A stretch of DNA of 64,000 nucleotides from Hydrolagus colliei. Its lineage: Eukaryota. The notes below the pieces were generated by a model. It worked only from the letters and a program-made list of their open reading frames with translations, had not been told where the DNA came from and did not search any database. The position numbers and the translations under genes were made by a program. Location: contig CM068769.1 in NCBI GenBank assembly GCA_035084275.1, forward strand, positions 1,984,001-2,048,000, written 5' to 3'. Below, piece by piece: positions 1 through 55,100 of this stretch. Position 1 is the first letter of the stretch. Each line of letters opens with the position of its first letter.

Positions 1-680
1 GAGGCGCTCTGCACGTGTCATTGTCTTGTTGTTGATATTGGGTTCGATACCAAGGTCAGTGCAACGCATTAGGCAGATATCCATATTCCACGGGCTTTAC
101 AACTCCATACTACTTGACAACATTCGCATTATGTACGAAATGTGCATAAGAGAGGATTCCACACACAGTGAGAAATGTGTTTGGAATCCACACAGGGCGA
201 AACCTTAGGCAAATTTCCTTCATCCACACGCTCAATAATAATCCATCCCACACCAAAAAATCTATCACCAATAATAAATTGGCCATTTGCATCCACTACT
301 GTGTTTGGGGACGTTGTTGTGCGCAATCGGCTGCCGGGTTTTTCTCTCCCATAAATACACAGTTAATTCAATTGACAATGTATTTTGTGAAGCGCGTTGA
401 GTCGCTTAGACAAGACGTGAAGAGCGATATAGCGAATGTAAGAATTATTAATATTAGTGCTGTTATTATCCACATGTCTTAATTCTAACAAACATTTATC
501 ACAATCTTCTATCCGTTGATTAATCAACACATATAATACACAGCTATTGATGCATTTCTGCTTCTTTAGTTGACTTGATATGACGTCAATAAGGTGTAAG
601 CTGTGGGGATAGTTAGCTGATAGTTTGTTACATGGTGTCTCACTGCTCTTTACTGTTTGCCAGCGTTTGTTTGTGATGAG

Positions 681-719
681 GGTTATTGTACGAGGCTTCC
701 TATGATGTATATCACTGTG
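681..719 (-). other. 23-bp-spacer recombination signal sequence (RSS) of the supporting TCR-delta V
   Basis: Minus strand reads CACAGTG + ATATACATCATAGGAAGCCTCGT (23 nt) + ACAATAACC immediately after the ...YHCGVSL coding end. Confidence 0.95.
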
Positions 720-1018
720 GTGCAGACTGACTCCACAGTGATACATAGCGGAGTCTGGCAGCTGCAGTCTGGCGATGGTTAAATGGATGATTTTCTTGGC
801 AGTGTCAAGAAAATCTGAAATATGATCTCCCTCTGCAGTAGAGTTTCCTCCCTCTCCAGTAGTGTTTCTGTGGATAAGGTTTTTCGGTGCCTCGCCAGGG
901 AACTGACGATACCAGGACACAACGAAATTCTGTCCACAGAATCCTAAGTATTGGCACTGTAGATCCACTCTCTCTCCAGCAACAGCCTTTGTTTCACGCG
1001 GTGACTGGTATATCGGTC
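720..1018 (-). CDS. TRDV: Leaderless 'supporting' TCR-delta V exon of a NAR-TCR cassette
   Basis: Open frame PIYQSPRETKAVAGERVDLQCQYLGFCGQNFVVSWYRQFPGEAPKNLI...DSAMYHCGVSL with Cys23, Trp41 and Cys104 plus an extra CDR1 Cys. Acceptor TTCCACGTAG at 1019-1028. No leader exon was found upstream. The upstream J donor (phase 1) joins it in frame. Confidence 0.9.
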
Positions 1019-1659
1019 CTACGTGGAAGAAATCACAGGATAGTGAGCATTGCAATATGGTAGCGTTGAAGAGCAATTAAGGAGGATATTAGTAGAATTG
1101 TTTATTTGCCAGATGTTTCGGGCAACTGTCCAACTTATCCCACTCCCATTGTTGCCCTATATTCTTGACACATGTTGATTCTGCATTACTCCACCTGTCC
1201 ATTTCCACTTTAAAATTGATTGTTTATCATGCTTTATACCACCATATCAAGCAGCGCGTTGAAGATTATAATAACTTTGGAATTTAAAACAAATTCTCTT
1301 TTTCTCTCTTTTGTTTCTGTTTTTTGGGGAAACAAAATCCGCTTTTAGCAGATAATATTTTCACATTCGTTGCGCTCATGATAACATGATCCCTTTGTAC
1401 ATGACAATCGCCTCTTCGCTGTACCCATTCTACTAAATCATCTTTCGACAATGTTCAAGAATTTAATATCCTTCTGAACCTTTCAAGAAAAAACACTTGA
1501 GAGCCACATTTCACCTAAACCATACAGTTACTAGGTTAATCATACTTGCATTTCTTAAAGCACGTCTCATGTCTTCTCGTCGCCTAAAAACCCTTCAACA
1601 TATATACTGTAAAGTGAAGAGATTATATATGTGGACGAAACGTGGCATAATAATCCAAT

Positions 1660-1960
1660 TTTTTTTTTTTGATATAGCGCTTTTCACAACATATCGACGT
1701 CTTAAAGCGTTTCACAGAATATACTGTAAAGTGGATTGATTGTATATTTAAGGGAGAAACACAGCAGCCAATTGCGCGTAGCAGCGACCCACAAAACTGT
1801 AGAGGATTGGAATTAACAATGTTTATTATTGTAGGTTGCCTGCACGGATTATTATTAGGCATGTGGAGTTAGGTAACTTCCCAAGGTTTCTCCCTAATCT
1901 TCCTGGATTCGAACACGGGTCTCACGCTTCGTTGTGATTGTGATATCCACTGAGCTATAA
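1660..1960 (-). mobile_element. tRNA-headed Deu-domain SINE with L2-type tail
   Basis: Head 'gtggatatcacaatcacaacgaagcgtgagacccgtgttcgaatccagg', core 'gggtcgctgctacgcgcaattggctgctgtgtttc', tail 'aaacgctttaagacgtc...aaaagcgctatatcaaa'. Confidence 0.75.
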
Positions 1961-2519
1961 TCCACAATAAAATAGCATTTTTAAAGTCTTCCATACATCT
2001 CAAAGCACAGCGTGAACCACAATGTAAGTTGAGTTGACTTTATTTTTGTTTAGACGTCATAGTTTGTACCATGGTTTTCTTTGAGATGTCTCAAAAAGGC
2101 GAAAAGCAATACAGCAAATGGATATATTGTGATCAGCAGTATTATTGTTGTCTCTGCCGAAAGAACAGTTTAGTTATCATTTGTTTGCCTTATTCTGTAT
2201 ATGTTTTCTGTAGCAGATTGTCCACATTGAATCTTTGGTTGTCTGTTAACATGCGTATGTTTAGCAGAGAATCCGGTGTTAGTGTGTACAGTTAACCAAG
2301 TTGGTTAAAAGTTGAGGAAAATGGAATTCCCCTCTGCAAATACTGTTACATTAAAGTCGCTGCTGGAGGAGGTGAATGTTGTCTCTGGCTTGTTTCCAAC
2401 ATGATTTATCTTTCCGTCTGTGAGCCTCTCAAAGCTGTTTCACTTCTGTGACAAGAAAACAGATTTCCTTATTCATTTTTAAAAAAATGTTTCTCGAATC
2501 TACTTATTTCGTTCTTACT

Positions 2520-2682
2520 NNNNNNNNNNNNNNNNNNNNNNNNNNNNNNNNNNNNNNNNNNNNNNNNNNNNNNNNNNNNNNNNNNNNNNNNNNNNNNNNN
2601 NNNNNNNNNNNNNNNNNNNNNNNNNNNNNNNNNNNNNNNNNNNNNNNNNNNNNNNNNNNNNNNNNNNNNNNNNNNNNNNNNN
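2520..2682. other. Assembly gap (163 N)
   Basis: Run of n characters inside the J-to-supporting-V intron. Confidence 1.
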
Positions 2683-3258
2683 GCATGCTTCAATATCTAC
2701 TTGCATATTGATGTCCAAGAAAATCAGTTTCTGTAGGAAGACTCAACGTATATGGAGAGAGGAAAATTAGTGAACGTTTCAATTTATTGATCTGTATTCA
2801 GACAAGGTGGGGTTTGAATGGAACTGTTTCTAGCACATTTCATATCGGATCCAATTCATTTCCAAGAAAAGTTGGCTTGTCGAGACAAATTCGTGGAACA
2901 GGAATTGAAATACGTCATTGTATCTAACATATATAGCGCCAGTTAGTTACCTAAACGTACACTCAACTTGTCCTCTCGTCAATTTGCTTTGGAAAATCTC
3001 TCCAGAAGAATTCAGCGACTTTAGAATATAATGAAATACACGTAGTTCAGCAAAGAAACAAGCCTCATATTGGGAGCTGTCCAATCTTTTGAAAATCGCA
3101 AACACATGTTTTAGTTTTCAAAAATTGATTGTTGAATTGACACAGTTTCAAAAAACTGGTTGCAATCTGTTAGAATATTGCACTATAGAAATTCAACAAA
3201 ATCAACAAATAAATGAATAGAGTTTTATTTTAATTTGATAGAAATTATCCACACTTAC

Positions 3259-3314
3259 GTTTTATTACCGTGACTTTGGTTCCTGATCCATCTAAGCTAT
3301 ATGGCTTATAATTA
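3259..3314 (-). CDS. NARTCR: NAR-TCR J segment
   Basis: Reads NYKPYSLDGSGTKVTVIK then C|GTAAGT (phase-1 donor at 3253-3258). The DGxGTxVTV motif resembles IgNAR-type J segments. Confidence 0.9.
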
Positions 3315-3352
3315 CACAGTCACACAGTTCTCGTAATACACGGTGGAAAACC
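3315..3352 (-). other. J RSS, 22-bp spacer
   Basis: On the + strand: CACAGTC (3315-3321) + 22 nt + TGGAAAACC (3344-3352). The nonamer is imperfect. Confidence 0.75.
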
Positions 3353-3667
3353 TAGTGTATCTGATCATGATTGAATACTGCTACAAAAAGATCTAAATGT
3401 TAACAAGATGGTTAATAGTTTCTACATCTCTACCACTGTCTCGTCACCCGACATTAATTTCGTCCAAATTCGGTTTAATTGATGTAGAATTTCCACCGAA
3501 CACGAACATATTCCCTCAACAAGAAAACATTTTTCGGTAAATAATTAAAGAATTTGCTGCTTGAAATAACTAACTCAGTAAGTAAACTACTGACAAGTTT
3601 AGCGTAATGAAAGAAGAAACAGTACTTAGTGTTCATGTGCAATATAATTCCATGTAAATAGCCGCAC

Positions 3668-3736
3668 GGTAGTTGTACTGATGGATTCCAATGTGGGTAT
3701 CAAATCACCACAGTATTTGCTGTCAACACAATTACA
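3668..3736 (-). other. NARTCR: NAR-TCR D segment (13 nt, 3696-3708) flanked by two 12-bp RSS
   Basis: + strand: GGTAGTTGT-12nt-CAATGTG | GGTATCAAATCAC | CACAGTA-12nt-ACAATTACA. Both spacers are exactly 12 nt, and the element lies between the V and J. Confidence 0.9.
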
Positions 3737-4062
3737 TTGCTTTGCAAAACAACTGTAATAGTGTCTGGTCATGTACAAATTACCAATCAATGATATCACA
3801 TGTACAATTGTGTTCAAGATATTCCTATTCAGATTTGATTTGTCGTCTAATATATATACTTAAATTGCGATATATGCCAATTGCACTCACATTCAACGTC
3901 CTTTAACACTACATAAATTTTCCTAAGTGTTCCCCAATAATGCTTGTTTGTCGAAGAGAATGTTACTAAACACCATTGCACATCACACAACAATGGATAA
4001 TGTGCATTGAATTCATTGACAAAGTCACATTGACTGTGTGTTGCCTTTGAATTGATGAAGAG

Positions 4063-4100
4063 GCTTTTTGTATTGTTGGAAGCCTGGATGCAGCATTGTG
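4063..4100 (-). other. RSS of NAR-TCR V, 22-bp spacer
   Basis: Minus strand: CACAATG + CTGCATCCAGGCTTCCAACAAT (22 nt) + ACAAAAAGC. Confidence 0.92.
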
Positions 4101-4389
4101 TCGTCCCACTGATATCGAGCTCTACATCTGTAGGTAGCGCTGTCGCCAACTTGCAAATCATTAATTTCCAGCAGAGATGTCTTTGTTCCCACTTTGATAA
4201 CATCAAACCGACTTTCGCGAGGGATGGACATCCAATCTCCTCCATTTGGAAACTGCCTTTGAAATGCCAAGCTGATAGATCTGTATCTCCCCGAATAACC
4301 TTCTGCAAAGACGCAGTTGATGGTCAGAGAATCGCATTCTTCTTTAGTAACAGAGTTTGGTGTCTGTGTTACGGTCTGACTGAAAACAT
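4101..4389 (-). CDS. NARTCR: NAR-TCR V exon (IgNAR-like variable domain)
   Basis: After acceptor TTTCAG reads VFSQTVTQTPNSVTKEECDSLTINCVFAEGYSGRYRSISLAFQRQFPNGGDWMSIPRESRFDVIKVGTKTSLLEINDLQVGDSATYRCRARYQW. QTP-SVTKE-(G/C)-SLTINCV, the short CDR2 region and INDL...TYRC match the IgNAR V pattern. Confidence 0.9.
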
Positions 4390-4744
4390 CTGAAACATGT
4401 GCAACAGGACATCAGGTTAATACTGGCAAAATCCTGAACTGCACAATCAGCAGCGATGCTTGGCCTGAGTTGAATTGATTTCAATTTGGACAATAATGAT
4501 ATAATTATCATGGTGAATGAATAGAATATAAGCAGAACAGATTAATCGATAGCAATCTTCTGCTGCTTTTCGCCCGCAAAATAAAAAAAGAAAATCTACG
4601 GTCACAATATATTCTGTGAAGCGCTTCAAGACGTTTCATCGATGTGAGAAGCCTCTGTTTCAAAGCGTGGAATTATGTAAATTATGATAAGGCACAGTTT
4701 AACGATGGTATTTATTCGAGCCGTGTAATTGTAACAAAACTCAC

Positions 4745-4787
4745 GCTGTAAGTAATGGATGGCGATGGCGATAGAGATGAGAAGCAT
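4745..4787 (-). CDS. NARTCR: Leader exon of NAR-TCR V
   Basis: ATG...MLLISIAIAIHYLQ + C|GTGAGT. It is 43 nt (phase 1) and joins the V exon in frame (C+AT = His). Confidence 0.85.
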
Positions 4788-4949
4788 TCTCTCCTCGCTG
4801 GACAACAGAGTGACTGTGTGTAACACAGGGATGTTCTGTAGCACCGCTAGAGACTAAATTACACTTGTACAGAGCCTTTCACGTCAGGAGAATCACATTA
4901 GATTGTGACGTGTTGGATGGTGACAGCGGATTTGAGAGTTGGAGGAGGG

Positions 4950-5990
4950 CGTGGCGAAAAGCTATTTGACGAAAGGGAGTGACAAACTGTGTACGTGAGC
5001 AGGGGGCAGAAGTGGGCTGATTATGCGGTGACTGTTGAGTAAATGGGCAATCGGCGAGGGCTGTGAGAGGAACGTAAATGATGACACTTCAAGTCGGAAA
5101 CCGACGGCGTGATGTAGAGAAGGCCTCTGTTGTGAGTTGGTAAAGACAAATTATCAACGACCGCAAAACAAAATTGATTGATCGAGCGCCTTTCAGTTCG
5201 AAAGCAAGGTGCTGCACAGCGAGGTCGGGAACAGAGAATTAGGGCACAGTATCATGGTAGGGTTTAGGGGAAGAGGAGTAGGAAATAGGGTGAGTGAGGA
5301 GGTGGAAATGGGGAGAGTTGGGATTAGATGGGGGTAAATTAGGGAAGGAGAGAGTTGGGATGGGAGGGAGAGATTCGTGTGCCTTATGAGAGAGTTGGTG
5401 GGGGAGGGGGAGAGATTTGGGAGGGGAGGGAAAATGTTGGCAGCGGAGAGAGACAGTTGGGAAACAGAGATATTTGGAAATGTGGCGAGATTTTGGAGGA
5501 CGCGAGAGATGGAAGAGGAGGGAGAAAATTGGGAGGTGAAGCAGAGTGTTGCGAGGGATCTGAGAGAGGTGGGAATGGAGAGCGAGAGAGTTGGAAAGGG
5601 AGTGAAAGAGTTGGAAGAGGAGAGTTGGAGAGTTGGGAAGGTAGTGCGAGAGATATGGAAGTCAGAGGGAAAGATTTGGGAGGTGAGAGAGCACGGATGG
5701 GAGGGAATTGGGAGGGGAGGCAGAGGATTGTAGAGAATGTAGAGAGTTGGGCATGGAGCAAGAGCGTTGGGTACGGAGATGACGATATTTGAGAGGGGAG
5801 CGAGAGAGATATGAAGGGAGGGTGGAGAGTTAGGAGGGCAGATGATGGGTGAGGAGGTCAAACTAGAAACTACGGAAAAGGCATTGTGTGTGGTTACAGT
5901 GGCTGGAGTCGTTTGCGGTAGAGAGAGTAATGGAGGGTTGCAATGTGACACAGTGGAAGAAGATTTGGCAGCCAAGTGATCAGTTGAACC
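4950..5990 (-). mobile_element. Degenerate LINE ORF2 fragment, probably L2 clade
   Basis: Purine-rich + strand with long low-complexity pseudo-ORFs, typical of decayed L2 endonuclease/RT sequence. Similar tracts elsewhere in the window end in L2-type tails. Boundaries approximate. Confidence 0.5.
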
Positions 5991-7559
5991 GTTTCAAAAC
6001 TTCTCAGCTGCTGTACAAAGTTAGAGCGTCTGCAGCATTAATATTTATATTATATCTCGGCCAGTCCATCTCTCTGCCTAAGTCTCTGTCATTGAAGTTG
6101 AGGCCTGTTGTGAAGACAATTATTTACCGATTTACAAAGCTGTGCTTAGGAACCCGCTTATTTGTCGTTTGTCCAATGGCTTTGGACGTTAAAAATTGCC
6201 TTCAAAATAATGTTAATAATTGGGTGATCGCTCATTCCACGTTTGAGTGTTGGATTTCGCTGTTCGTAATAGTCTGCAAACTCTGTCCACCAAACACACA
6301 ACAACAACAACAACAGCTTGTACTTATGTAGCGTCCTCCACTCCGGACGGCTTCTCATTGTGCTTCAGTTAAATGGTACCATCCAAGGACAGCGGGAGAA
6401 AGGTGACCGAATGTGAAACATTCAATACTCTTGTATCCTGTTAAGCGCTAGGAGCCCTCTCGATCACGTAATCAGGTGATTTATTCAATGTCAGCATTAC
6501 CAACGTCAAATTGTCTATTCTGACAGATAATAATCCTGTTTCCAGCTGACATTTGTATTAAGTATGAAGATGGTTGATGGAATGTGAGGTGGAGATGATC
6601 CGTAGTGGACATAAACGTTTTAGATTATTTTTGATTCCATGATGGAGAGTGAAGAGAATGCAGTTTGGGGCTTTGTGTTTGAAAGTGATGATACTGCCGA
6701 TCATTCTGGAGTTAATTTATTGCTGATAATCATATTAGTCATTGCAGTTCACATAGTGATTGATCACGTACTCGAGCCTCCTCCAAGTGCTTCACGGAAT
6801 GCGCGGTGGAACGGAGTGTCTTTGTGTTTTTGGGGTCAAACATTATGCAGTTACGCATTGCAGCATCTCATGGACAGCAGTGTATTTAATGATCAAGTTC
6901 TTGTATATTATATATTTATTATATTTTTGGAGTAAATTATTATTTTATTTATTTCCATTGACGTATCTATTTCTTATTGTTAACGTCTTACTTAATTATT
7001 CAGAATTGATTCTGTTATTTGGGTTCACTTACACTTACTATTTATTATTTTATGTATTTTTACCCGTATGTTTTTCATTATGTTATGGTCTATTAGACAA
7101 TGACTCGGTTTATCTATTTGTTTAAGGGATTATTGGCTGATTTATTTTACTTTTCCAAGGATAATTTCCAGTGGAACATGACTCGACAATAGACTAACAA
7201 CCGAGTTCCTATTTACTGTTCAGTAAAGAGAGGCATGTGTCATAATGAAACTGTCTCTAGGTTTCGTCCAGCCTGGGAATCGAATGCAGGACCTCTCGCT
7301 TGTGAGATAGAACCTCTCGCAATAAAATTAGAGGATTCCACCTGATTTGTTACATGGCGGCATCTGGTGGTGGTTCAGGAGAATGATAGCGTATGATTTG
7401 AGTTGATTTACGTAACATGCAAGTTGGTTTTCAGTTAACCGAGTTACCATTGAGTGCGGGATAAGTCGTACAACATTAATATTACTCTCACGTAAACACT
7501 CTCCTCCACAACCAAACCTTCTATACTGACTGAGTCGCCAGAGCTACACTCCTCCTCCC

Positions 7560-8988: not shown

Positions 8989-9340
8989 AGTTGCTGTTAG
9001 AGCCCTACAGTGTAGTCAACCACTGTGGTGAGACTGAAGGCATAGTGATGCACTGCGTTGTCAGATACCAGCAGCTCAGAGATTGATAAACTAGTGATAG
9101 AATTAGATTCCTGCAGCTGAGCATCGAAACGGTTTCCAAATCCTGTTCGTTTCTCTAGATCGCCATCACCCGAATATCACCGGACTATAAACTCTGGGTG
9201 TTTGTCTGGGTAATGTCTGTACCAGAAGAGATAGTATTGCATGCAGTAGTGGTGTAGGTACACACAAGATTGGAAGCTTCTCCTTCTTTCATAACCATCG
9301 TCGGCAGCTTTCTGACTGAAAGTATCGGCGTCAGAGAGTT
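8989..9340 (-). pseudogene. TCR alpha/delta V pseudogene with 23-RSS (RSS 8989-9027)
   Basis: YYLFWYRHYPDKHPEFIVR* has an in-frame TGA. FR1 has compensating frameshifts and Cys104 is replaced by Tyr (DNAVHHYAF). RSS: CACAGTG-23-ACAGCAACT. Confidence 0.88.
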
Positions 9341-10751: not shown

Positions 10752-11103
10752 AGTTTTTGTACGAGCCCTGCAGTGTTGTCAACCCCAGTGGAGAGACTAA
10801 AGGCACAGTAATATACTGCGCTGTCAGATACCAGCAGCTCAGAGATGAATATACTGGTGGAAAAACTAAATGTCTCTAGCTGAGCAGAGAAGCGGTTTCC
10901 AAAACCTATTCCTTTGTCTTGATTGTTATCCAGAGAATTTGTCCAGATTATAAATTCTCGGTGTTTGTCTCGGTAGTGTCTTTACCAGAAGAGATAGTAG
11001 TAGCTGGCACTAGTGGAGTATGTGCAAACGAAATCGACAGTATCTCCTTCTTCCTTAATCACCGTGTCAGCAATCTGACTGACAGAATCGGCGTCACAGA
11101 GTT
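10752..11103 (-). pseudogene. TCR alpha/delta V pseudogene (paralog of 8989-9340) with atypical RSS (10752-10790)
   Basis: LCDADSVSQIADTVIKKEGDTVDFVCTYSTSASYYYLFW*RHY...DSAVYYCAFSL has a single TAA after Trp41. RSS: CACTGGG-23-ACAAAAACT. Confidence 0.9.
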
Positions 11104-12926: not shown

Positions 12927-13414
12927 GGTTTATGTACGGTGGTGTAGCCTGAAAGTAACAACGTGTGAGTGATGCCACAATAATATGTTGCTGCATCAGA
13001 TAGAGTCACAGCCAGCACAGTTACAGCGGATGACTTGCTGCTCGTGTCCAAACTAGTGGTGAAAATACCTTCAGCAAATTCAGCTCTGAAATAATCCCCA
13101 ACATGATCATGTCTCAGTGTGTACAGAGGAGGCTGGCCTGGATACTGACGGTACCAGTATATGTAGACATTCGTGTAACGAGCAGAGTAGGTCCTTCTCA
13201 AGGTCACAGTCTGGACTTCAGTGACAGAAACTTCCCTCTGCTTTGGTTTAACTTTATCTCCATTCGCTGTCGCTGTATCCAGAGAGAACAAGGTATTCCC
13301 TGTAACGCACACACCAGAGATAAAGCTCCAAGTGGTCTTCAGAACGAGAGTAATTTGCTTACATAAAAGGACCAATAACATTAAAATGATCAAAGCAGTG
13401 TGTTTACTCTCCAT
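12927..13414 (-). pseudogene. TCR alpha/delta V gene (leader 13363-13414, V exon 12966-13272, RSS 12927-12965) lacking Cys23
   Basis: Leader MESKHTALIILMLLVLL|GTAAG. The V frame is open, but TLRRTY has AGG at the Cys23 position. Trp41 and YYC are present. RSS: CACGTTG-23-ACATAAACC. Confidence 0.85.
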
Positions 13415-13929: not shown

Positions 13930-14190
13930 TATCCTTGCGTTTGACATAGCGCTTTTCACATCTTGACGACGCACAAAAACGCTTCACACAATATACGGTT
14001 AACTGAATTGACTGTATGCTTGTGAGCGAAACGCAGCAGGCAGTTGCGCACAGCAGCGTCCCACACAAACAGTCGAGGATTGAAATGTATAATGTTATTA
14101 TTGCATTATCTTTGGTGGGATTACTATTAGCCGTCTGGATTAAAGAAACTTGACCAAGGATTCGCCCTCACCTACCTGGATTCAACCAAT
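13930..14190 (-). mobile_element. Deu-domain SINE copy
   Basis: Same core (gggacgctgctgtgcgcaactgcctgctgcgtttc) and tail as the other copies. Confidence 0.7.
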
Positions 14191-17599: not shown

Positions 17600-18346
17600 G
17601 GTTGTTGTACGGCAGGAACACTGATCTGTGCCGCCGTAGGGCTCAGCGCACAGTAATACACAGCAGAGTCTGTCATTGTCACTTGGGATATATTCAATGG
17701 CACGGTTCGTCGCGTTTTATCCAAATTCGTTGTGAAATGTTTTTGTGCAAATTCTGCATGAATCCCCTTGCTGTTCCTTGTGTATACGTAAAGGATATAA
17801 TCTGGAGCTTTGTTGGGATAGTGACGGTACCAGAATATATATGGATCGCCGCCGCTTGTGGCTGTATAATTACACAGCAGATAGGCATATTCTCCTTCAT
17901 TCACTGTCACAGTAGATTGGAGCTGAGTCACTGAGTCTCCTCCACTAAGCCCTGGAAACCAGAAACACATCGTCATTCAATGCAACAGCAACAATTCCAA
18001 TCGTCCTCTTGAGTTTCATACGGCACCTCATTAAATCGATGGTACGTCTCCAAACAATTCACAGAATAAAATTAGCGAAAAACAATGTAGTTTGTGTAAT
18101 GTTTCACCCTGTCCTGTCAGGGGATCCTCTCGGATTTTGAGATACAGCATGATCCTCTCGGCTGTGAAGCCAGTGTTACAAACACTGAAATAATGGACAC
18201 TCCAACTCGTCAATCTGTTTCTGTATTATTATGCACTTTTTTCGATAAAACATTGGCGTTGGATAATACTTTCGGATAAAAATACAAATAGAATGCTTAC
18301 CTAATAAGGCAGCGATGGCTACTGCGACATGGATATACATTTTCAT
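17600..18346 (-). CDS. TCR alpha/delta V gene (leader 18301-18346, V exon 17639-17951) with intact ORF but defective RSS heptamer
   Basis: Leader MKMYIHVAVAIAALL-G|GTAAG. V reads LSGGDSVTQLQSTVTVNEGEYAYLLCNY...YIFWYRHYP...DSAVYYCALSP. The heptamer position reads TACGGCG, followed by 23 nt and ACAACAACC. Confidence 0.88.
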
Positions 18347-20423: not shown

Positions 20424-20918
20424 TGTTTTTGTACAGGCTCCTCTTAGACACGCAGTACTGTGCTCTCTGCTGCACAGAAGTACGTGGCGATGTCTGTCAC
20501 CCTCACGTCTCTGATTGTCAGTGTGCTGTTCTTCTCTTTACCATTAGCCAAAGCACTTATCCGCTCCTCCGCCTTTACCTCTCTTTTTCCCAACACCAAT
20601 AAACCTATGGAGCCGTTTCCATACTGTTTGTACCATTGGAAGGCTGGGCTGAGCAAAGCCGTGTTGCAATCCATGGATACATTCCCATTTTCATTCCATG
20701 TAATGACCTGAGTTCTCTGTGACACTTCTCTTTCAGCCAAGACACCTGGGGATTAGAATGAACATTTTTGCAAAGAAATTCTGAAAATGTCTGCCACAAA
20801 ACTTGTCGTTATTTAGCAGTAAAACAAGTATGTTTTTTTCCAACCTCACACTGTACTTACAGAAGAGCGAAATAATGGAACTAAAAATAATACATTTTGC
20901 TTGGTAAATTGGCTTCAT
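20424..20918 (-). CDS. Apparently functional TCR alpha-like V gene (leader 20861-20918, V exon 20463-20745, RSS 20424-20462)
   Basis: Leader MKPIYQAKCIIFSSIISLF|GTAAG. V reads VLAEREVSQ...SMDCNTALLSPAFQWYKQ...DIATYFCAAE with all hallmark residues. RSS: CACAGTA-23-ACAAAAACA. Confidence 0.9.
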
Positions 20919-22888: not shown

Positions 22889-23230
22889 AGTTTTTGTATG
22901 GAGCCGCCATAGCCTAGCAGCAGTGTGGGTTCATTGGCACAATATTACATGTCACTGTCGCTGACCAGGGCGCTGCCAATGCTCAGTTCAAAAACCTGGC
23001 TCGTTTCATCGACGTTGGAGGAAACTCTAGCTGGGAATTCAGTGCTCCTGTGATCCTTCACTTCGGTGGGGCGAAGAATATAGACGGGAGCGTTGCTGGA
23101 AGCCTGTCTGTACCAGCAGAGATAGCAGTTGTCACTGATTGTCTTTAAGGTGCAGGATAACTTCACATCTTCTCCTTCTTCAACCGATCTCTCAGAAATC
23201 GATTGTTTCCCGGTGTCTTGTTACCGTTAC
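22889..23230 (-). pseudogene. TCR alpha/delta V pseudogene with 23-RSS (22889-22927)
   Basis: VKLSCTLKTISDNCYLCWYRQ...SDSDM*YCA has a TAA before Cys104, and FR1 is out of phase with the acceptor. RSS: CACACTG-23-ACAAAAACT. Confidence 0.88.
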
Positions 23231-28341: not shown

Positions 28342-28674
28342 GGTTTTTGTACGGGTGTCTCGGGGATGCCTTCGCTGTGGGCCTCAGTGCACAAACATAG
28401 GCAGCGGTGTCGCTGAGCTGGAGGTTGTCGATCTTGAACTGGAAATGTTTCTTAGAAGAATCCATCAGGGCAGAGAAGCGTTCCTGACTAATATCCTTCC
28501 CGTAGGAATGCCTTCGGATGAGGAAAGCGGGCCCTTCACTGCGGCGCAGGCTGTACAGCAGCACTGATTTGCTGTCAGTAGTCGTGGAGACATTACAGCT
28601 GATAGTCAGTGTGGCGCCTTCGAAACGCCAGGCTGCTTTCGGGCTCTGCCTCACCGAATCCCCATCGCTGATTC
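28342..28674 (-). CDS. TCR alpha/delta V exon, open frame but Trp41 absent (RSS 28342-28379)
   Basis: ISDGDSVRQSPKAAWRFEGATLTISCNVSTTTDSKSVLLYSLRR...DTAAYVCALRP. RSS: CACAGCG-22-ACAAAAACC. No convincing leader was found. Confidence 0.75.
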
Positions 28675-28769: not shown

Positions 28770-29090
28770 GCTCCTGTAGCTCAGAGGTAGGAGCACTCGC
28801 CTTACAAACGTGTGTCCTTTGTTGATATGCATGCAGATCAGGATGAGACTTTGTGCGAGTTTCCTTACTCCACATGCGCGATTAATAATAATCCCTCCGA
28901 AAAAACACAATATTGTGGTAAAAACTGGTCATTTTCAACGCACGACTGTTTGTGGGAACTTTGCTGTGTGCAATTGGCTGCCGCGTTGCACCCACAACTA
29001 TACAGTCAGTTCACTTTAATGTTTAATCTGTGAAGCGCTTCGAGACGTCGATAAGATGTGAAAAGCGCTACATCAAATCAACGGTTATAA
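28770..29090 (+). mobile_element. Near full-length Deu-domain SINE copy
   Basis: 'agctcctgtagctcagaggtaggagcactcgccttacaa' tRNA-like head through an 'aagcgcttcgagacgtc...aaaagcgctacatcaaat' tail. Confidence 0.8.
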
Positions 29091-33069: not shown

Positions 33070-33370
33070 CTTTTCCATTTGAGATAGCGCTTTTCATGTC
33101 TGATCGACGTCAAAATGCGCTTCACAGAATATACTGTAAAGTGAATTGACTGTCTATTATTCGCGGGCAACACGCGGCAGCAAATTGCGCACAGCAGACA
33201 TGGGTGTAAATTACCAATTTTTATTATTGTGTGTTTTTTGGGAACGGATTATCATTAGACGAGTGTGCTCAGCAAGGAAACTTGCCCAAGGTTTTGCCAA
33301 GGCCTGCCTGGTTTCAAGCACAGTTCTCACGCTTGACAGGCGAGCGCTCGCACCACTGACCTACAGGAAT
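33070..33370 (-). mobile_element. Deu-domain SINE copy
   Basis: Same head, core and tail pattern as the other copies. Confidence 0.72.
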
Positions 33371-54650: not shown

Positions 54651-54799
54651 AAGTATTATTATTAATTTGATAAAGCATACAATGACAATTGAATTATAAG
54701 ACTTTCAAACAATCTGGAGGAAGTTCAGTGTCCGAAACCCTTCAAGGACACATTAGAGACATGGGAGCCTTCAACATGTTAATAGTAATAATAATAATA

Positions 54800-55100
54800 A
54801 TATTTTCAGTTGATATCGCGCTTTTCACATCTGATCGACGTCCCAAAGAGCTTCAATGGTTATACGAAAGTGAGTTGACTGTACATTTGTGAGCGAATCA
54901 CGGCAGCAAATAGCGCAGTCGTGGATTGAAATTATCAATTTTATTATTGTAGATTTTTGAAGGGAATATTAATAGCGTGTGGAGTAAGGAAACTTGACCA
55001 TGGTTTCATCCTGACTTGCCTGGATGCGAATACAGTTTTCCCCATTTTCGTCCCTCCAGCTTGCAAGACAAGTGCACTCCCCACTAAGCCACAGGAGCCC
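54800..55100 (-). mobile_element. Deu-domain SINE copy
   Basis: Minus-strand head 'ggctcctgtggcttagtggggagtgcacttgtcttgcaag' with core and tail. Confidence 0.7.

What the first reader, a model, noticed from the sequence alone, without database searches (positions are those of the whole stretch)
681..4787. Complete NAR-TCR cassette: IgNAR-like V-D-J spliced onto a leaderless TCR-delta V
Seen: L (4745-4787), V (4101-4389)-22RSS, 12-D-12 (3696-3708), 22RSS-J (3259-3314) and a second V (720-1018) with its own 23-RSS but no leader. The J donor is phase 1 and the acceptor gives ...KVTVIK-R-PIYQSP in frame. Known: cartilaginous fish NAR-TCR is a doubly rearranging TCR-delta chain with an N-terminal IgNAR-like V supported by a leaderless V-delta. 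Inference: this cassette is functional and needs two independent V(D)J events. It is a described system, but every part can be read here from raw sequence.
Basis: partly seen in the sequence, partly recalled or inferred. Interest (0 to 1): 0.75.

Follow-up and report, generated by a model that had tools for sequence, protein, structure and literature searches.

The report
Germline NAR-TCR cassette, cartilaginous fish
This stretch is an intact, unrearranged copy of the known cartilaginous-fish "NAR-TCR" gene unit, in which an antibody-like V-D-J set is spliced onto a leaderless T-cell-receptor delta V segment; it is a clean textbook example, not a new kind of system.

Summary
These are a 43-nt leader (4787-4745), a NAR-type V exon (4389-4101) with a 22-spacer RSS, and one D (3708-3696) with 12-spacer RSSs on both sides. 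They continue with a J (3314-3259) that has a 22-spacer RSS and a phase-1 GTAAGT donor, then a second V exon (1018-720) with a canonical 23-RSS. The second V has a phase-1 acceptor and no leader.

The first V groups with NAR-TCR V domains, next to IgNAR V and away from conventional TCR Vs. It has the a-b-loop Cys and lacks the framework Trp, as published for this family. The second V groups with NAR-TCR "supporting" Vδ domains, closest to Callorhinchus milii, and has the family's CDR1 Cys.

Three shark loci show the same layout, with almost the same V-D and D-J spacing.

The 163-N gap lies in the J-to-V intron. No reading frame crosses it, but physical contiguity rests on the scaffold.

Expression, splicing and the downstream Dδ/Jδ/Cδ could not be checked. 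The system has been known since 2006, and in chimaeras since 2007.

The parts
4745..4787 (-). Leader exon of the NAR-TCR V (MLLISIAIAIHYLQ, phase-1 donor GTGAGT)
   Evidence: It is the top-scoring leader candidate in the systematic scan (71% hydrophobic, 6/6 donor match). It resembles the C. milii leaders MSLLGVSISFLFLQ.
4101..4389 (-). NAR-TCR V exon (V-set domain with Cys23 and Cys104, an extra Cys in the a-b loop, and Phe in place of the framework Trp)
   Evidence: V-set E 5.9e-05, 23.7 bits, below Pfam's 26-bit gathering cut-off; best solved relatives are IgNAR V, E 2e-11; best library hit E 1.7e-31. NAR clade 95/96; alignment.
4063..4100 (-). 23-type RSS of the NAR V: CACAATG, 22-nt spacer, ACAAAAAGC
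3709..3736 (-). 5' 12-RSS of D: TGTAATTGT, 12-nt spacer, TACTGTG (weak nonamer, 6/9)
3696..3708 (-). Single D segment, GTGATTTGATACC (one of three frames is open: D-L-I)
   Evidence: It is the only segment between V and J that is flanked by two 12-RSSs.
3668..3695 (-). 3' 12-RSS of D: CACATTG, 12-nt spacer, ACAACTACC
3315..3352 (-). 23-type RSS of J: GGTTTTCCA, 22-nt spacer, GACTGTG
3259..3314 (-). J segment (NYKPYSLDGSGTKVTVIK), phase-1 donor GTAAGT
   Evidence: The DGSGT-VTV motif is shared with J regions of shark and C. milii NAR-TCR gene models.
1019..3258 (-). Intron between the NAR J and the supporting V. It is 2240 nt, including the 163-N assembly gap at 2520-2682 and a SINE-like repeat at 1647-1957.
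   Evidence: No Pfam domain was found in any readable ORF of 40 aa or more that was scanned. The equivalent introns in sharks are 2455, about 2790 and 4600 nt.
720..1018 (-). Leaderless supporting TCR-delta V exon ((R)PIYQSP...MYHCGVSLH, with Cys in CDR1: LGFCGQ)
   Evidence: V-set E 1e-14; no leader found; supporting-V clade 96/82, and with C. milii 100/97. CDR1 Cys; 66% identity to C. milii P0001.
681..719 (-). 23-RSS of the supporting V: CACAGTG, 23-nt spacer, ACAATAACC

Best explanation
This is a germline (unrearranged) NAR-TCR cassette inside a TCR alpha/delta V-segment region of a cartilaginous fish, probably a holocephalan or something close to Callorhinchus.

Proposed mechanism:

1. 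In a developing T cell, RAG joins the NAR V (23-type RSS) to the single D (12-RSS on both sides) and the D to the J (23-type RSS). This follows the 12/23 rule.
2. Independently, the supporting V (23-RSS) is joined to TCR-delta D/J segments that lie further downstream, outside the window.
3. Transcription starts upstream of the only leader, at 4787.
4. Splicing joins the leader to the NAR VDJ, then the J donor (phase 1) to the supporting-V exon acceptor (phase 1). This gives ...KVTVIK-R-PIYQSP.... The delta J is then spliced to C-delta.
5. The product is a three-domain delta chain. Its membrane-distal NAR V is unpaired and probably tied to the supporting V by a disulfide between the a-b-loop Cys and the CDR1 Cys.

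Shown here: all segments, RSS types, splice phases, open frames, family residues, clade membership and the conserved layout.

Inferred: the rearrangement itself, the splicing, the disulfide, expression, and pairing with a gamma chain.
For: - Segments and phases read directly from the sequence.
- RSS enrichment, and a single D flanked by two RSSs.
- The NAR V's best solved relatives are IgNAR V domains (E 2e-11), against 9e-6 for the best TCR alpha.
- An exhaustive HMMER search finds cartilaginous-fish gene models with the same NAR V-J-supporting V build. These include a 385-aa Mustelus asterias chain that runs on past the supporting V for about 150 residues to a hydrophobic C-terminus. I read that tail as a TCR constant region by eye and did not test it.
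- Maximum-likelihood tree: window NAR V in the NAR clade 95/96 and the NAR-TCR subclade 87/88. Window supporting V in the supporting-V clade 96/82, and with C. milii 100/97. The conventional Vs of the same window fall elsewhere.
- Hallmark residues as defined in PMC1845163 are all present: a-b-loop Cys (KEEC), Phe instead of Trp (AFQRQ), CDR1 Cys (LGFCG), and the J motif DGSGT-VTV.
- The leader scan recovers good leaders for the NAR V and for three conventional Vs in the window. It finds none for the supporting V: the best candidate is 47% hydrophobic with donor GTTTCC.
- Three shark loci (L001, L002, L003) show the same L-V-D-J-intron-leaderless V layout. V-D spacing is 381-392 nt and D-J spacing 370-386 nt, against 392 and 381 nt here.
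Against: - No RNA evidence was available, so expression and the J-to-V splice are not shown for this copy.
- The RSSs are slightly off consensus: V heptamer CACAATG, J heptamer GACTGTG, and a D 5' nonamer matching 6/9.
- The J has D-G-S-G in place of the usual F/W-G-X-G, although the whole family shares this.
- The D-delta, J-delta and C-delta that the supporting V must use are not in the window.
- A 163-N gap of estimated length interrupts the intron, so adjacency of J and the supporting V depends on the scaffold. A leader hidden in the gap cannot be formally excluded.
Confidence: 0.88

Rival explanations
1. The cassette belongs to the NAR-TCR family but is a silent or decaying copy. It is never rearranged or expressed because its RSSs or promoter are defective.
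For: The RSS heptamers and nonamers are non-canonical. Several neighbouring V segments in the same window are pseudogenes, with stops in Va, Vb and Vg and no Cys23 in Vc. I looked only briefly for a promoter motif and found none. No transcript data were available.
Against: All four coding parts have open frames and keep the structural Cys residues and family hallmarks. The CAC/GTG bases next to the coding ends are intact in every RSS. Both splice donors are strong (GTGAGT, GTAAGT) and the acceptors have pyrimidine tracts. The supporting V's RSS is canonical.
Confidence: 0.09
2. The scaffold wrongly joins two contigs at the N gap. The NAR V-D-J (3259-4787) and the leaderless V (720-1018) would then belong to different cassettes or places.
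For: The gap at 2520-2682 lies between the two halves, and its length is only an estimate. The flanks are unique sequence, and no repeat bridges them.
Against: Both halves are on the same strand and in the order the family requires. The implied intron (about 2.24 kb) is close to the 2.46-kb and about 2.8-kb introns of two shark cassettes. A leaderless supporting V needs an upstream NAR V-D-J, and the tblastn scan found only one NAR V in the window. Even a misjoin between two NAR-TCR cassettes would leave the interpretation unchanged.
Confidence: 0.03
3. The first V-D-J is an IgNAR (secreted heavy-chain-only antibody) cluster that only happens to sit next to a TCR V segment.
For: The best solved-structure matches are IgNAR V domains.
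Against: - There is one D rather than the three of IgNAR (three is my own knowledge; one D here).
- J is followed by a V exon. No Pfam domain was found in the readable intron ORFs scanned.
- The a-b-loop Cys is present and the framework Trp absent, the opposite of the four IgNAR sequences aligned.
- The tree puts the domain in the NAR-TCR subclade, not the IgNAR subclade, which has 97/88 support.
- The nearest relatives are from C. milii, whose genome is reported to lack IgNAR (PMC3964593).
Confidence: 0.01

Closest known systems
Elephant shark (Callorhinchus milii) NAR-TcR V and associated TcR-delta V genes (Venkatesh et al. 2007, PMC1845163; gene models XP_007909367 = P0001 and UPI0004576186 = P0006)
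   Same: These are the nearest sequences for both domains. The NAR V is 48-49% identical and the supporting V 58-66% identical, and both pairs are sister groups in the tree. They share the leader style, the a-b-loop Cys, Phe for Trp, a CDR1 Cys (P0006; P0001 has Trp at that position), a two-residue longer CDR1 than in sharks (GQ[DN]F), and a J of the type DGS-TKVTV-K. The RSS spacer and 3' flank of the supporting V look conserved when translated (compared by eye, not scored).
   Different: The sequences are only about 50-65% identical, so this is either another paralogue or another species. The linker between J and the supporting V is three residues shorter (KR-PIYQSP against KRKSYTVSQSP).
Nurse shark NAR-TcR (Criscitiello, Saltis, Flajnik 2006, PNAS 103:5036). 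The paper itself could not be opened here; I know it through PMC1845163, PMC5931798 and PMC3457774.
   Same: A doubly rearranging delta chain with an N-terminal IgNAR-related V that has its own leader, V, D and J. A dedicated leaderless supporting V-delta carries a CDR1 Cys. Each V domain results from a separate V(D)J rearrangement.
   Different: Elasmobranch members have a longer J-V linker (TADSxSLVS) and a shorter supporting-V CDR1. Their identity to the window is 38-47%.
IgNAR variable domain (shark heavy-chain-only antibody)
   Same: It has the same single-domain V fold, and IgNAR V is the sister clade (95/96 for the joint clade). The best PDB matches are IgNAR V.
   Different: IgNAR keeps the framework Trp and lacks the a-b-loop Cys. 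Its J splices to constant exons, and it uses three D segments (my own knowledge).
TCR-mu of marsupials and monotremes
   Same: It is also a three-domain TCR chain with an unpaired N-terminal V on a supporting V (PMC3457774). The working principle is the same.
   Different: Its N-terminal V is VH-related, not NAR-related. It is regarded as convergent (PMC3457774). It sits at a locus of its own rather than inside TCR alpha/delta.

Membership tests
NAR-TCR (doubly rearranging TCR-delta) | The N-terminal V domain is related to IgNAR V, not to conventional TCR or IgH V | tested here: met
   PDB: IgNAR V at E 2e-11 against TCR alpha at 9e-6. Tree: NAR clade 95/96 and NAR-TCR subclade 87/88.
NAR-TCR (doubly rearranging TCR-delta) | The NAR-TcR V has a typical leader peptide | tested here: met
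   Leader exon 4787-4745 with donor GTGAGT, phase 1.
NAR-TCR (doubly rearranging TCR-delta) | Cys in the a-b loop of the NAR-TcR V (PMC1845163) | tested here: met
   KEEC aligns with the KEC/EEC of all 11 NAR-TCR V rows. The four IgNAR rows have no Cys there.
NAR-TCR (doubly rearranging TCR-delta) | The canonical Trp of the WYRK motif is absent in the NAR-TcR V (PMC1845163) | tested here: met
   The window has AFQRQ. Ten of the 11 NAR-TCR rows have Phe (P0015 has Leu) and the IgNAR rows have Trp.
NAR-TCR (doubly rearranging TCR-delta) | The NAR V domain is assembled from its own V, D and J segments with compatible RSSs | tested here: met
   V has a 22-spacer RSS, D has 12-spacer RSSs on both sides, and J has a 22-spacer RSS. 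Three shark loci show the same arrangement. The rearrangement itself was not observed.
NAR-TCR (doubly rearranging TCR-delta) | The NAR J splices in frame onto the supporting V exon | tested here: inconclusive
   The donor and acceptor are both phase 1 and the junction reads KVTVIK-R-PIYQSP. Gene models in other species carry the same junction. No RNA data exist for this copy, and phase-1 compatibility is generic to Ig-superfamily exons.
NAR-TCR (doubly rearranging TCR-delta) | The supporting TcR-delta V lacks a leader (PMC1845163) | tested here: met
   No hydrophobic ATG exon with a usable phase-1 donor lies in the 2.2 kb upstream. The same scan finds leaders for the NAR V and for Vc, Vd and Ve. 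The exon starts at framework 1, with no second leader part. Caveat: the 163 N are unread.
NAR-TCR (doubly rearranging TCR-delta) | The supporting V has a conserved Cys in CDR1 (PMC1845163) | tested here: met
   LGFCGQ aligns with SGFC/SGIC/SGLC/SGSC in 10 of 11 supporting Vs. The conventional Vs lack it.
NAR-TCR (doubly rearranging TCR-delta) | The supporting V rearranges to TCR-delta D/J and is expressed with C-delta | not testable with these tools
   The supporting V has a canonical 23-RSS. However, the window ends 680 nt beyond that RSS, so no D-delta, J-delta or C-delta is present.
NAR-TCR (doubly rearranging TCR-delta) | Lies within the TCR alpha/delta locus | tested here: inconclusive
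   Seven conventional TRAV/TRDV-like V segments lie on the same strand upstream at about 9-29 kb. One of them groups with a C. milii conventional V at 99/90. No constant gene or marker gene lies in the window.
IgNAR | Framework Trp present, no a-b-loop Cys, and J followed by IgNAR constant exons | tested here: not met
   (residues); no Pfam domain in the readable intron ORFs scanned. J is followed by a V exon.
TCR-mu (mammalian) | The N-terminal V is of the VH type | tested here: not met
   The domain lies in the NAR clade. The VH-like domain of P0005 falls elsewhere in the tree.

The most novel reading that the evidence does not exclude
The generic phase-1 compatibility and RSS types would let this one cassette give more than the canonical three-domain chain. 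First, the leader donor (4745) could splice directly to the supporting-V acceptor (1018), reading MLLISIAIAIHYLQ-R-PIYQSP. The NAR V would be skipped, and its leader would be lent to an otherwise leaderless V-delta, giving a conventional two-domain delta chain. Second, the NAR V's 23-type RSS could join directly to a downstream delta D or J 12-RSS. That would delete its own D, J and the supporting V, giving a NAR V-C-delta chain. Nothing in the sequence forbids either product. I found neither described in the papers I could read.
Probability: 0.08. Interest if true: 0.45.

Novelty: new member of a known kind. Interest (0 to 1): 0.2.

Why it matters
The cassette confirms that the whole NAR-TCR unit can be recognised from raw germline sequence. 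Leader, V, one D, J, intron, leaderless V-delta and all five RSSs are readable.

It also adds a further holocephalan-type copy to a family that bears on one evolutionary question: did the single-domain NAR V begin in a TCR and move to an antibody locus later? Venkatesh 2014 (PMC3964593) and Sci Adv 2025 (PMC12227049) discuss this.

One small new observation is the near-identical V-D and D-J spacing (about 380-390 nt) between this copy and three shark cassettes, despite only 38-47% protein identity.

Otherwise it is an ordinary instance of a system described in 2006.

Tried and rejected
- The word-indexed protein search found nothing, either with L+V or with the conceptual L-V-J-V product. It also missed C. 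milii models that are in that collection. Its negative result therefore says nothing about novelty.
- The founding PNAS 2006 paper and Ott 2021 are not held in the library. Family definitions were taken from PMC1845163 and from reviews.
- ARAGORN and Rfam do not recognise the tRNA-like head of the SINE in the intron.
- Pfam found no domain in any of the intron ORFs scanned (all minus-strand ORFs of 40 aa or more, plus two plus-strand ones). No constant or leader exon is hidden in the readable intron.
- PDB ranking for the supporting V was uninformative, because multi-domain scFv chains dominate it.
- The species could not be established. The representative library is clustered at 50% identity, so a closer relative may lie hidden behind P0001.
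- I did not fetch C. milii genomic DNA, to avoid any chance of reading the gap from another copy of the same genome.
- Structure prediction was not run. The tool returns no coordinates, so the Cys-Cys distance could not have been measured.
Full report
**Observation**

Reading the minus strand of 1-5400 and recomputing every boundary reproduces the finding exactly.

- The leader exon is 4787-4745. It is 43 nt, reads MLLISIAIAIHYLQ, ends in phase 1, and is followed by GTGAGT.
- After a 355-nt intron and a tttcag acceptor, the V exon 4389-4101 reads (H)VFSQTVTQTPNSVTKEECDSLTINCVF...DSATYRCRARYQWD.
- That exon abuts CACAATG, a 22-nt spacer and ACAAAAAGC.
- A 13-nt D (3708-3696) sits between TGTAATTGT-12-TACTGTG and CACATTG-12-ACAACTACC.
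- The J (3314-3259) follows GGTTTTCCA-22-GACTGTG. It reads NYKPYSLDGSGTKVTVIK and ends in phase 1 before GTAAGT.
- The second V exon (1018-720) follows tcttccacgtag. With the last J base it reads R-PIYQSPRETKAVAGERVDLQCQYLGFCGQNFVVSWYRQ...DSAMYHCGVSLH.
- It abuts a canonical CACAGTG-23-ACAATAACC, which ends at 681.

RSS-like sites are far more frequent than chance in the V-J interval: 3 observed against 0.165 in shuffles. The only segment there that is flanked by two 12-RSSs is the proposed D.

**The gap**

The only run of N in the window is 2520-2682 (163 N). It lies in the intron between the J donor (3258) and the second V's acceptor (1019). No reading frame crosses it, and the in-frame junction depends only on the two splice sites.

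Physical contiguity cannot be tested here.

- The flanks are unique sequence and no repeat bridges them.
- None of the readable intron ORFs of 40 aa or more that I scanned hits a Pfam family.

Indirect support for contiguity:

- The strand and order are correct.
- The implied intron is 2240 nt. The same intron measures 2455 nt in locus L001 and about 2790 nt in L003, though 4600 nt in L002.

I did not try to read or infer the missing letters.

**What the two V domains are**

Both domains match Pfam's V-set family. The first scores 23.7 bits, just under the 26-bit gathering cut-off, and the second scores 54.9 bits.

- Against solved structures, the first 31 hits of the first V are IgNAR V domains or VNAR-type single-domain constructs by their molecule names, plus one engineered scDb (best E 1.9e-11). 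The first TCR alpha chain follows at 8.9e-6.
- An exhaustive HMMER search of 1.84 billion representatives gave 54 hits.
- The best hits are Callorhinchus milii gene models. These are P0001 (XP_007909367), P0013, P0019 and P0020; P0006 (UPI0004576186) carries no organism label in the look-up but is P0001's sister in the tree.
- Next come shark models from Mustelus asterias, Cetorhinus maximus, Hemiscyllium ocellatum and Heterodontus francisci, and then Triakis IgNAR.
- Many of these models have the same build: NAR V, a DGSGT-VTV J, then a second V.
- P0007 (385 aa) runs on past its supporting V to a hydrophobic C-terminus. I read that tail as a TCR constant region by eye.

I built a maximum-likelihood tree of 40 V domains.

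- The window's first V falls in the NAR clade (95/96). Within it, it falls in the NAR-TCR V subclade (87/88), with the C. milii sequences.
- The window's second V falls in the clade of supporting Vs (96/82). There it is sister to the two C. milii-type supporting Vs (100/97).
- The four conventional Vs from the same window, a C. milii conventional V and a set of conventional TCR-alpha-like V domains from P0027 all fall outside both clades.

**Family hallmarks**

Venkatesh et al. 2007 (PMC1845163) list four features. The NAR-TcR V has a typical leader, a Cys in the a-b loop and no Trp in WYRK. The associated TcR-delta V has no leader and a conserved Cys in CDR1.

The alignment shows the residue features in the window:

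| Feature | Window | NAR-TCR relatives | Contrast |
|---|---|---|---|
| a-b loop | KEEC | KEC/EEC in every NAR-TCR row | KETGES, KDIGES, KEAGES in IgNAR |
| WYRK position | Phe (AFQRQ) | Phe in ten of eleven rows (Leu in P0015) | Trp in IgNAR |
| Supporting-V CDR1 | LGFCG | SGFC/SGIC/SGLC/SGSC in 10 of 11 | no Cys in conventional Vs |

For the leader I used one scan for every V. It looked for an ATG-started open exon of 31-79 nt with a phase-1 GT donor.

- It recovers MLLISIAIAIHYLQ|GTGAGT for the NAR V.
- It recovers MKMYIHVAVAIAALL|GTAAGC for Vd, MESKHTALIILMLLVLL|GTAAGC for Vc and MKPIYQAKCIIFSSIISLF|GTAAGT for Ve.
- For the second V, nothing scores better than a 47%-hydrophobic peptide with donor GTTTCC.
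- The second V exon begins at framework 1, without the few leader residues that conventional V exons carry.

**Layout in other species**

I fetched three shark cassettes:

- L001, Hemiscyllium ocellatum, GCA_020745735.1.
- L002, GCA_902713615.2, which I believe is Scyliorhinus canicula (from memory).
- L003, GCA_004010195.1, which I believe is Chiloscyllium plagiosum (from memory).

All three show L, V with a 22/23-spacer RSS, one D with a 12-spacer 3' RSS (the 5' 12-RSS passed the scan filter only in L003), J with a 23-spacer RSS and a phase-1 GTAAGT donor, a long intron, and a leaderless V with a 23-RSS.

| Cassette | V-D spacing (nt) | D-J spacing (nt) |
|---|---|---|
| Window | 392 | 381 |
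| L001 | 381 | 378 |
| L003 | 392 | 386 |
| L002 | not measured | 370 |

This spacing is strikingly constant, given 38-47% protein identity between the window and the shark domains.

**Mechanism**

The RSS types obey the 12/23 rule for V-to-D and D-to-J joining within the cassette. The supporting V's 23-RSS needs a 12-RSS partner among the delta D/J segments. The window ends 680 nt beyond that RSS, so these partners are not visible.

After two independent rearrangements, one transcript from the single leader would be spliced L / NAR VDJ / supporting VDJ / C-delta. The two extra cysteines are the proposed interdomain disulfide (PMC1845163). [quoted passage not shown]

These steps are inferred from the family, not shown for this copy. 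The phase-1 match of J donor and V acceptor is a general property of Ig-superfamily exons, so it is weak evidence taken alone.

**Rivals**

- *A dead copy.* This cannot be excluded without RNA, and several neighbouring Vs are pseudogenes. However, every frame, structural Cys, splice site and coding-proximal CAC/GTG is intact.
- *A scaffold misjoin at the gap.* This is possible but unlikely, and it would not change what the parts are.
- *An IgNAR cluster.* This is excluded by the residues, the single D, the V exon after J and the tree.

**Comparison and novelty**

This is a member of the NAR-TCR family described in the nurse shark in 2006 and in the elephant shark in 2007. It is closest to the holocephalan sequences, at 48-49% and 58-66% identity. 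That suggests a chimaera genome or a divergent C. milii paralogue, but the species could not be fixed.

Minor differences from elasmobranch copies are a J-V linker three residues shorter and a CDR1 two residues longer in the supporting V.

Nothing here departs from the known system, so interest is low (0.2).

The least ordinary reading the data allow is that the same cassette also yields shorter chains, either by leader-to-supporting-V exon skipping or by direct NAR V-to-delta D/J joining. I give that about 8%.

Noticed in passing
window 1647-1957 (inside the J-to-supporting-V intron); other copies at e.g. 13940-14183, 33078-33334, 28806-29077, 54788-55033: A SINE-like interspersed repeat has 20 or more diverged matches (65-78% identity) scattered over the window on both strands. 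By eye, tRNA-like sequence lies just beyond its upstream (minus-strand) end, at about 1900-1975. Neither ARAGORN nor Rfam recognises it.
   Followed up: partly
window ~9030-9340, ~10793-11103, ~22928-23230 (minus strand): Three conventional TRAV/TRDV-like V segments are pseudogenes. Va has in-frame stops. Vb has a stop inside the WYR motif. Vg has a stop just before the second Cys, though it keeps a good CACACTG-23-ACAAAAACT RSS.
   Followed up: partly
window 17641-17951, leader 18346-18301 (minus strand): Vd has an intact frame and a good leader, and it groups with a C. milii conventional V (99/90). Its RSS heptamer lacks CAC, reading about TACGGCG-23-ACAACAACC by eye, so it may not be able to recombine.
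   Followed up: no
window ~12968-13299, leader 13414-13363 (minus strand): Vc has a leader and an open frame but lacks the first structural Cys (LRRTY), and its heptamer is CACACGT. It is probably non-functional.
   Followed up: no
window ~20463-20745 and 28380-28663 (minus strand): Two more V segments with open frames and good 23-type RSSs. Ve has CACAGTA-23-ACAAAAACA and lies on a very long branch in the tree. Vf has CACAGCG-22-ACAAAAACC, and no leader was found for it within 600 nt by the scan.
   Followed up: partly
window 3315-4100 compared with L001 6490-7264, L003 3482-4275 and L002 13095-13863: The V-to-D and D-to-J spacings of the NAR cassette (392 and 381 nt) are almost the same as in three shark cassettes (381-392 and 370-386 nt), despite only 38-47% protein identity. 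This may reflect a constraint on segment spacing, as in cluster-type shark Ig genes.
   Followed up: partly
window ~5000-6000: On the minus strand, a C/T-rich low-complexity tract lies directly upstream of the cassette's leader. GC skew on the plus strand is +0.41 over 4001-6000. It produces long spurious open frames.
   Followed up: no
L002 18877-19178: By the scan's filter, the supporting V in the GCA_902713615.2 cassette is followed by a tandem run of at least five near-identical CACAGTG-23-ACAGAAACC RSS-like units, spaced 59-120 nt apart (about 60 nt or a multiple).
   Followed up: no
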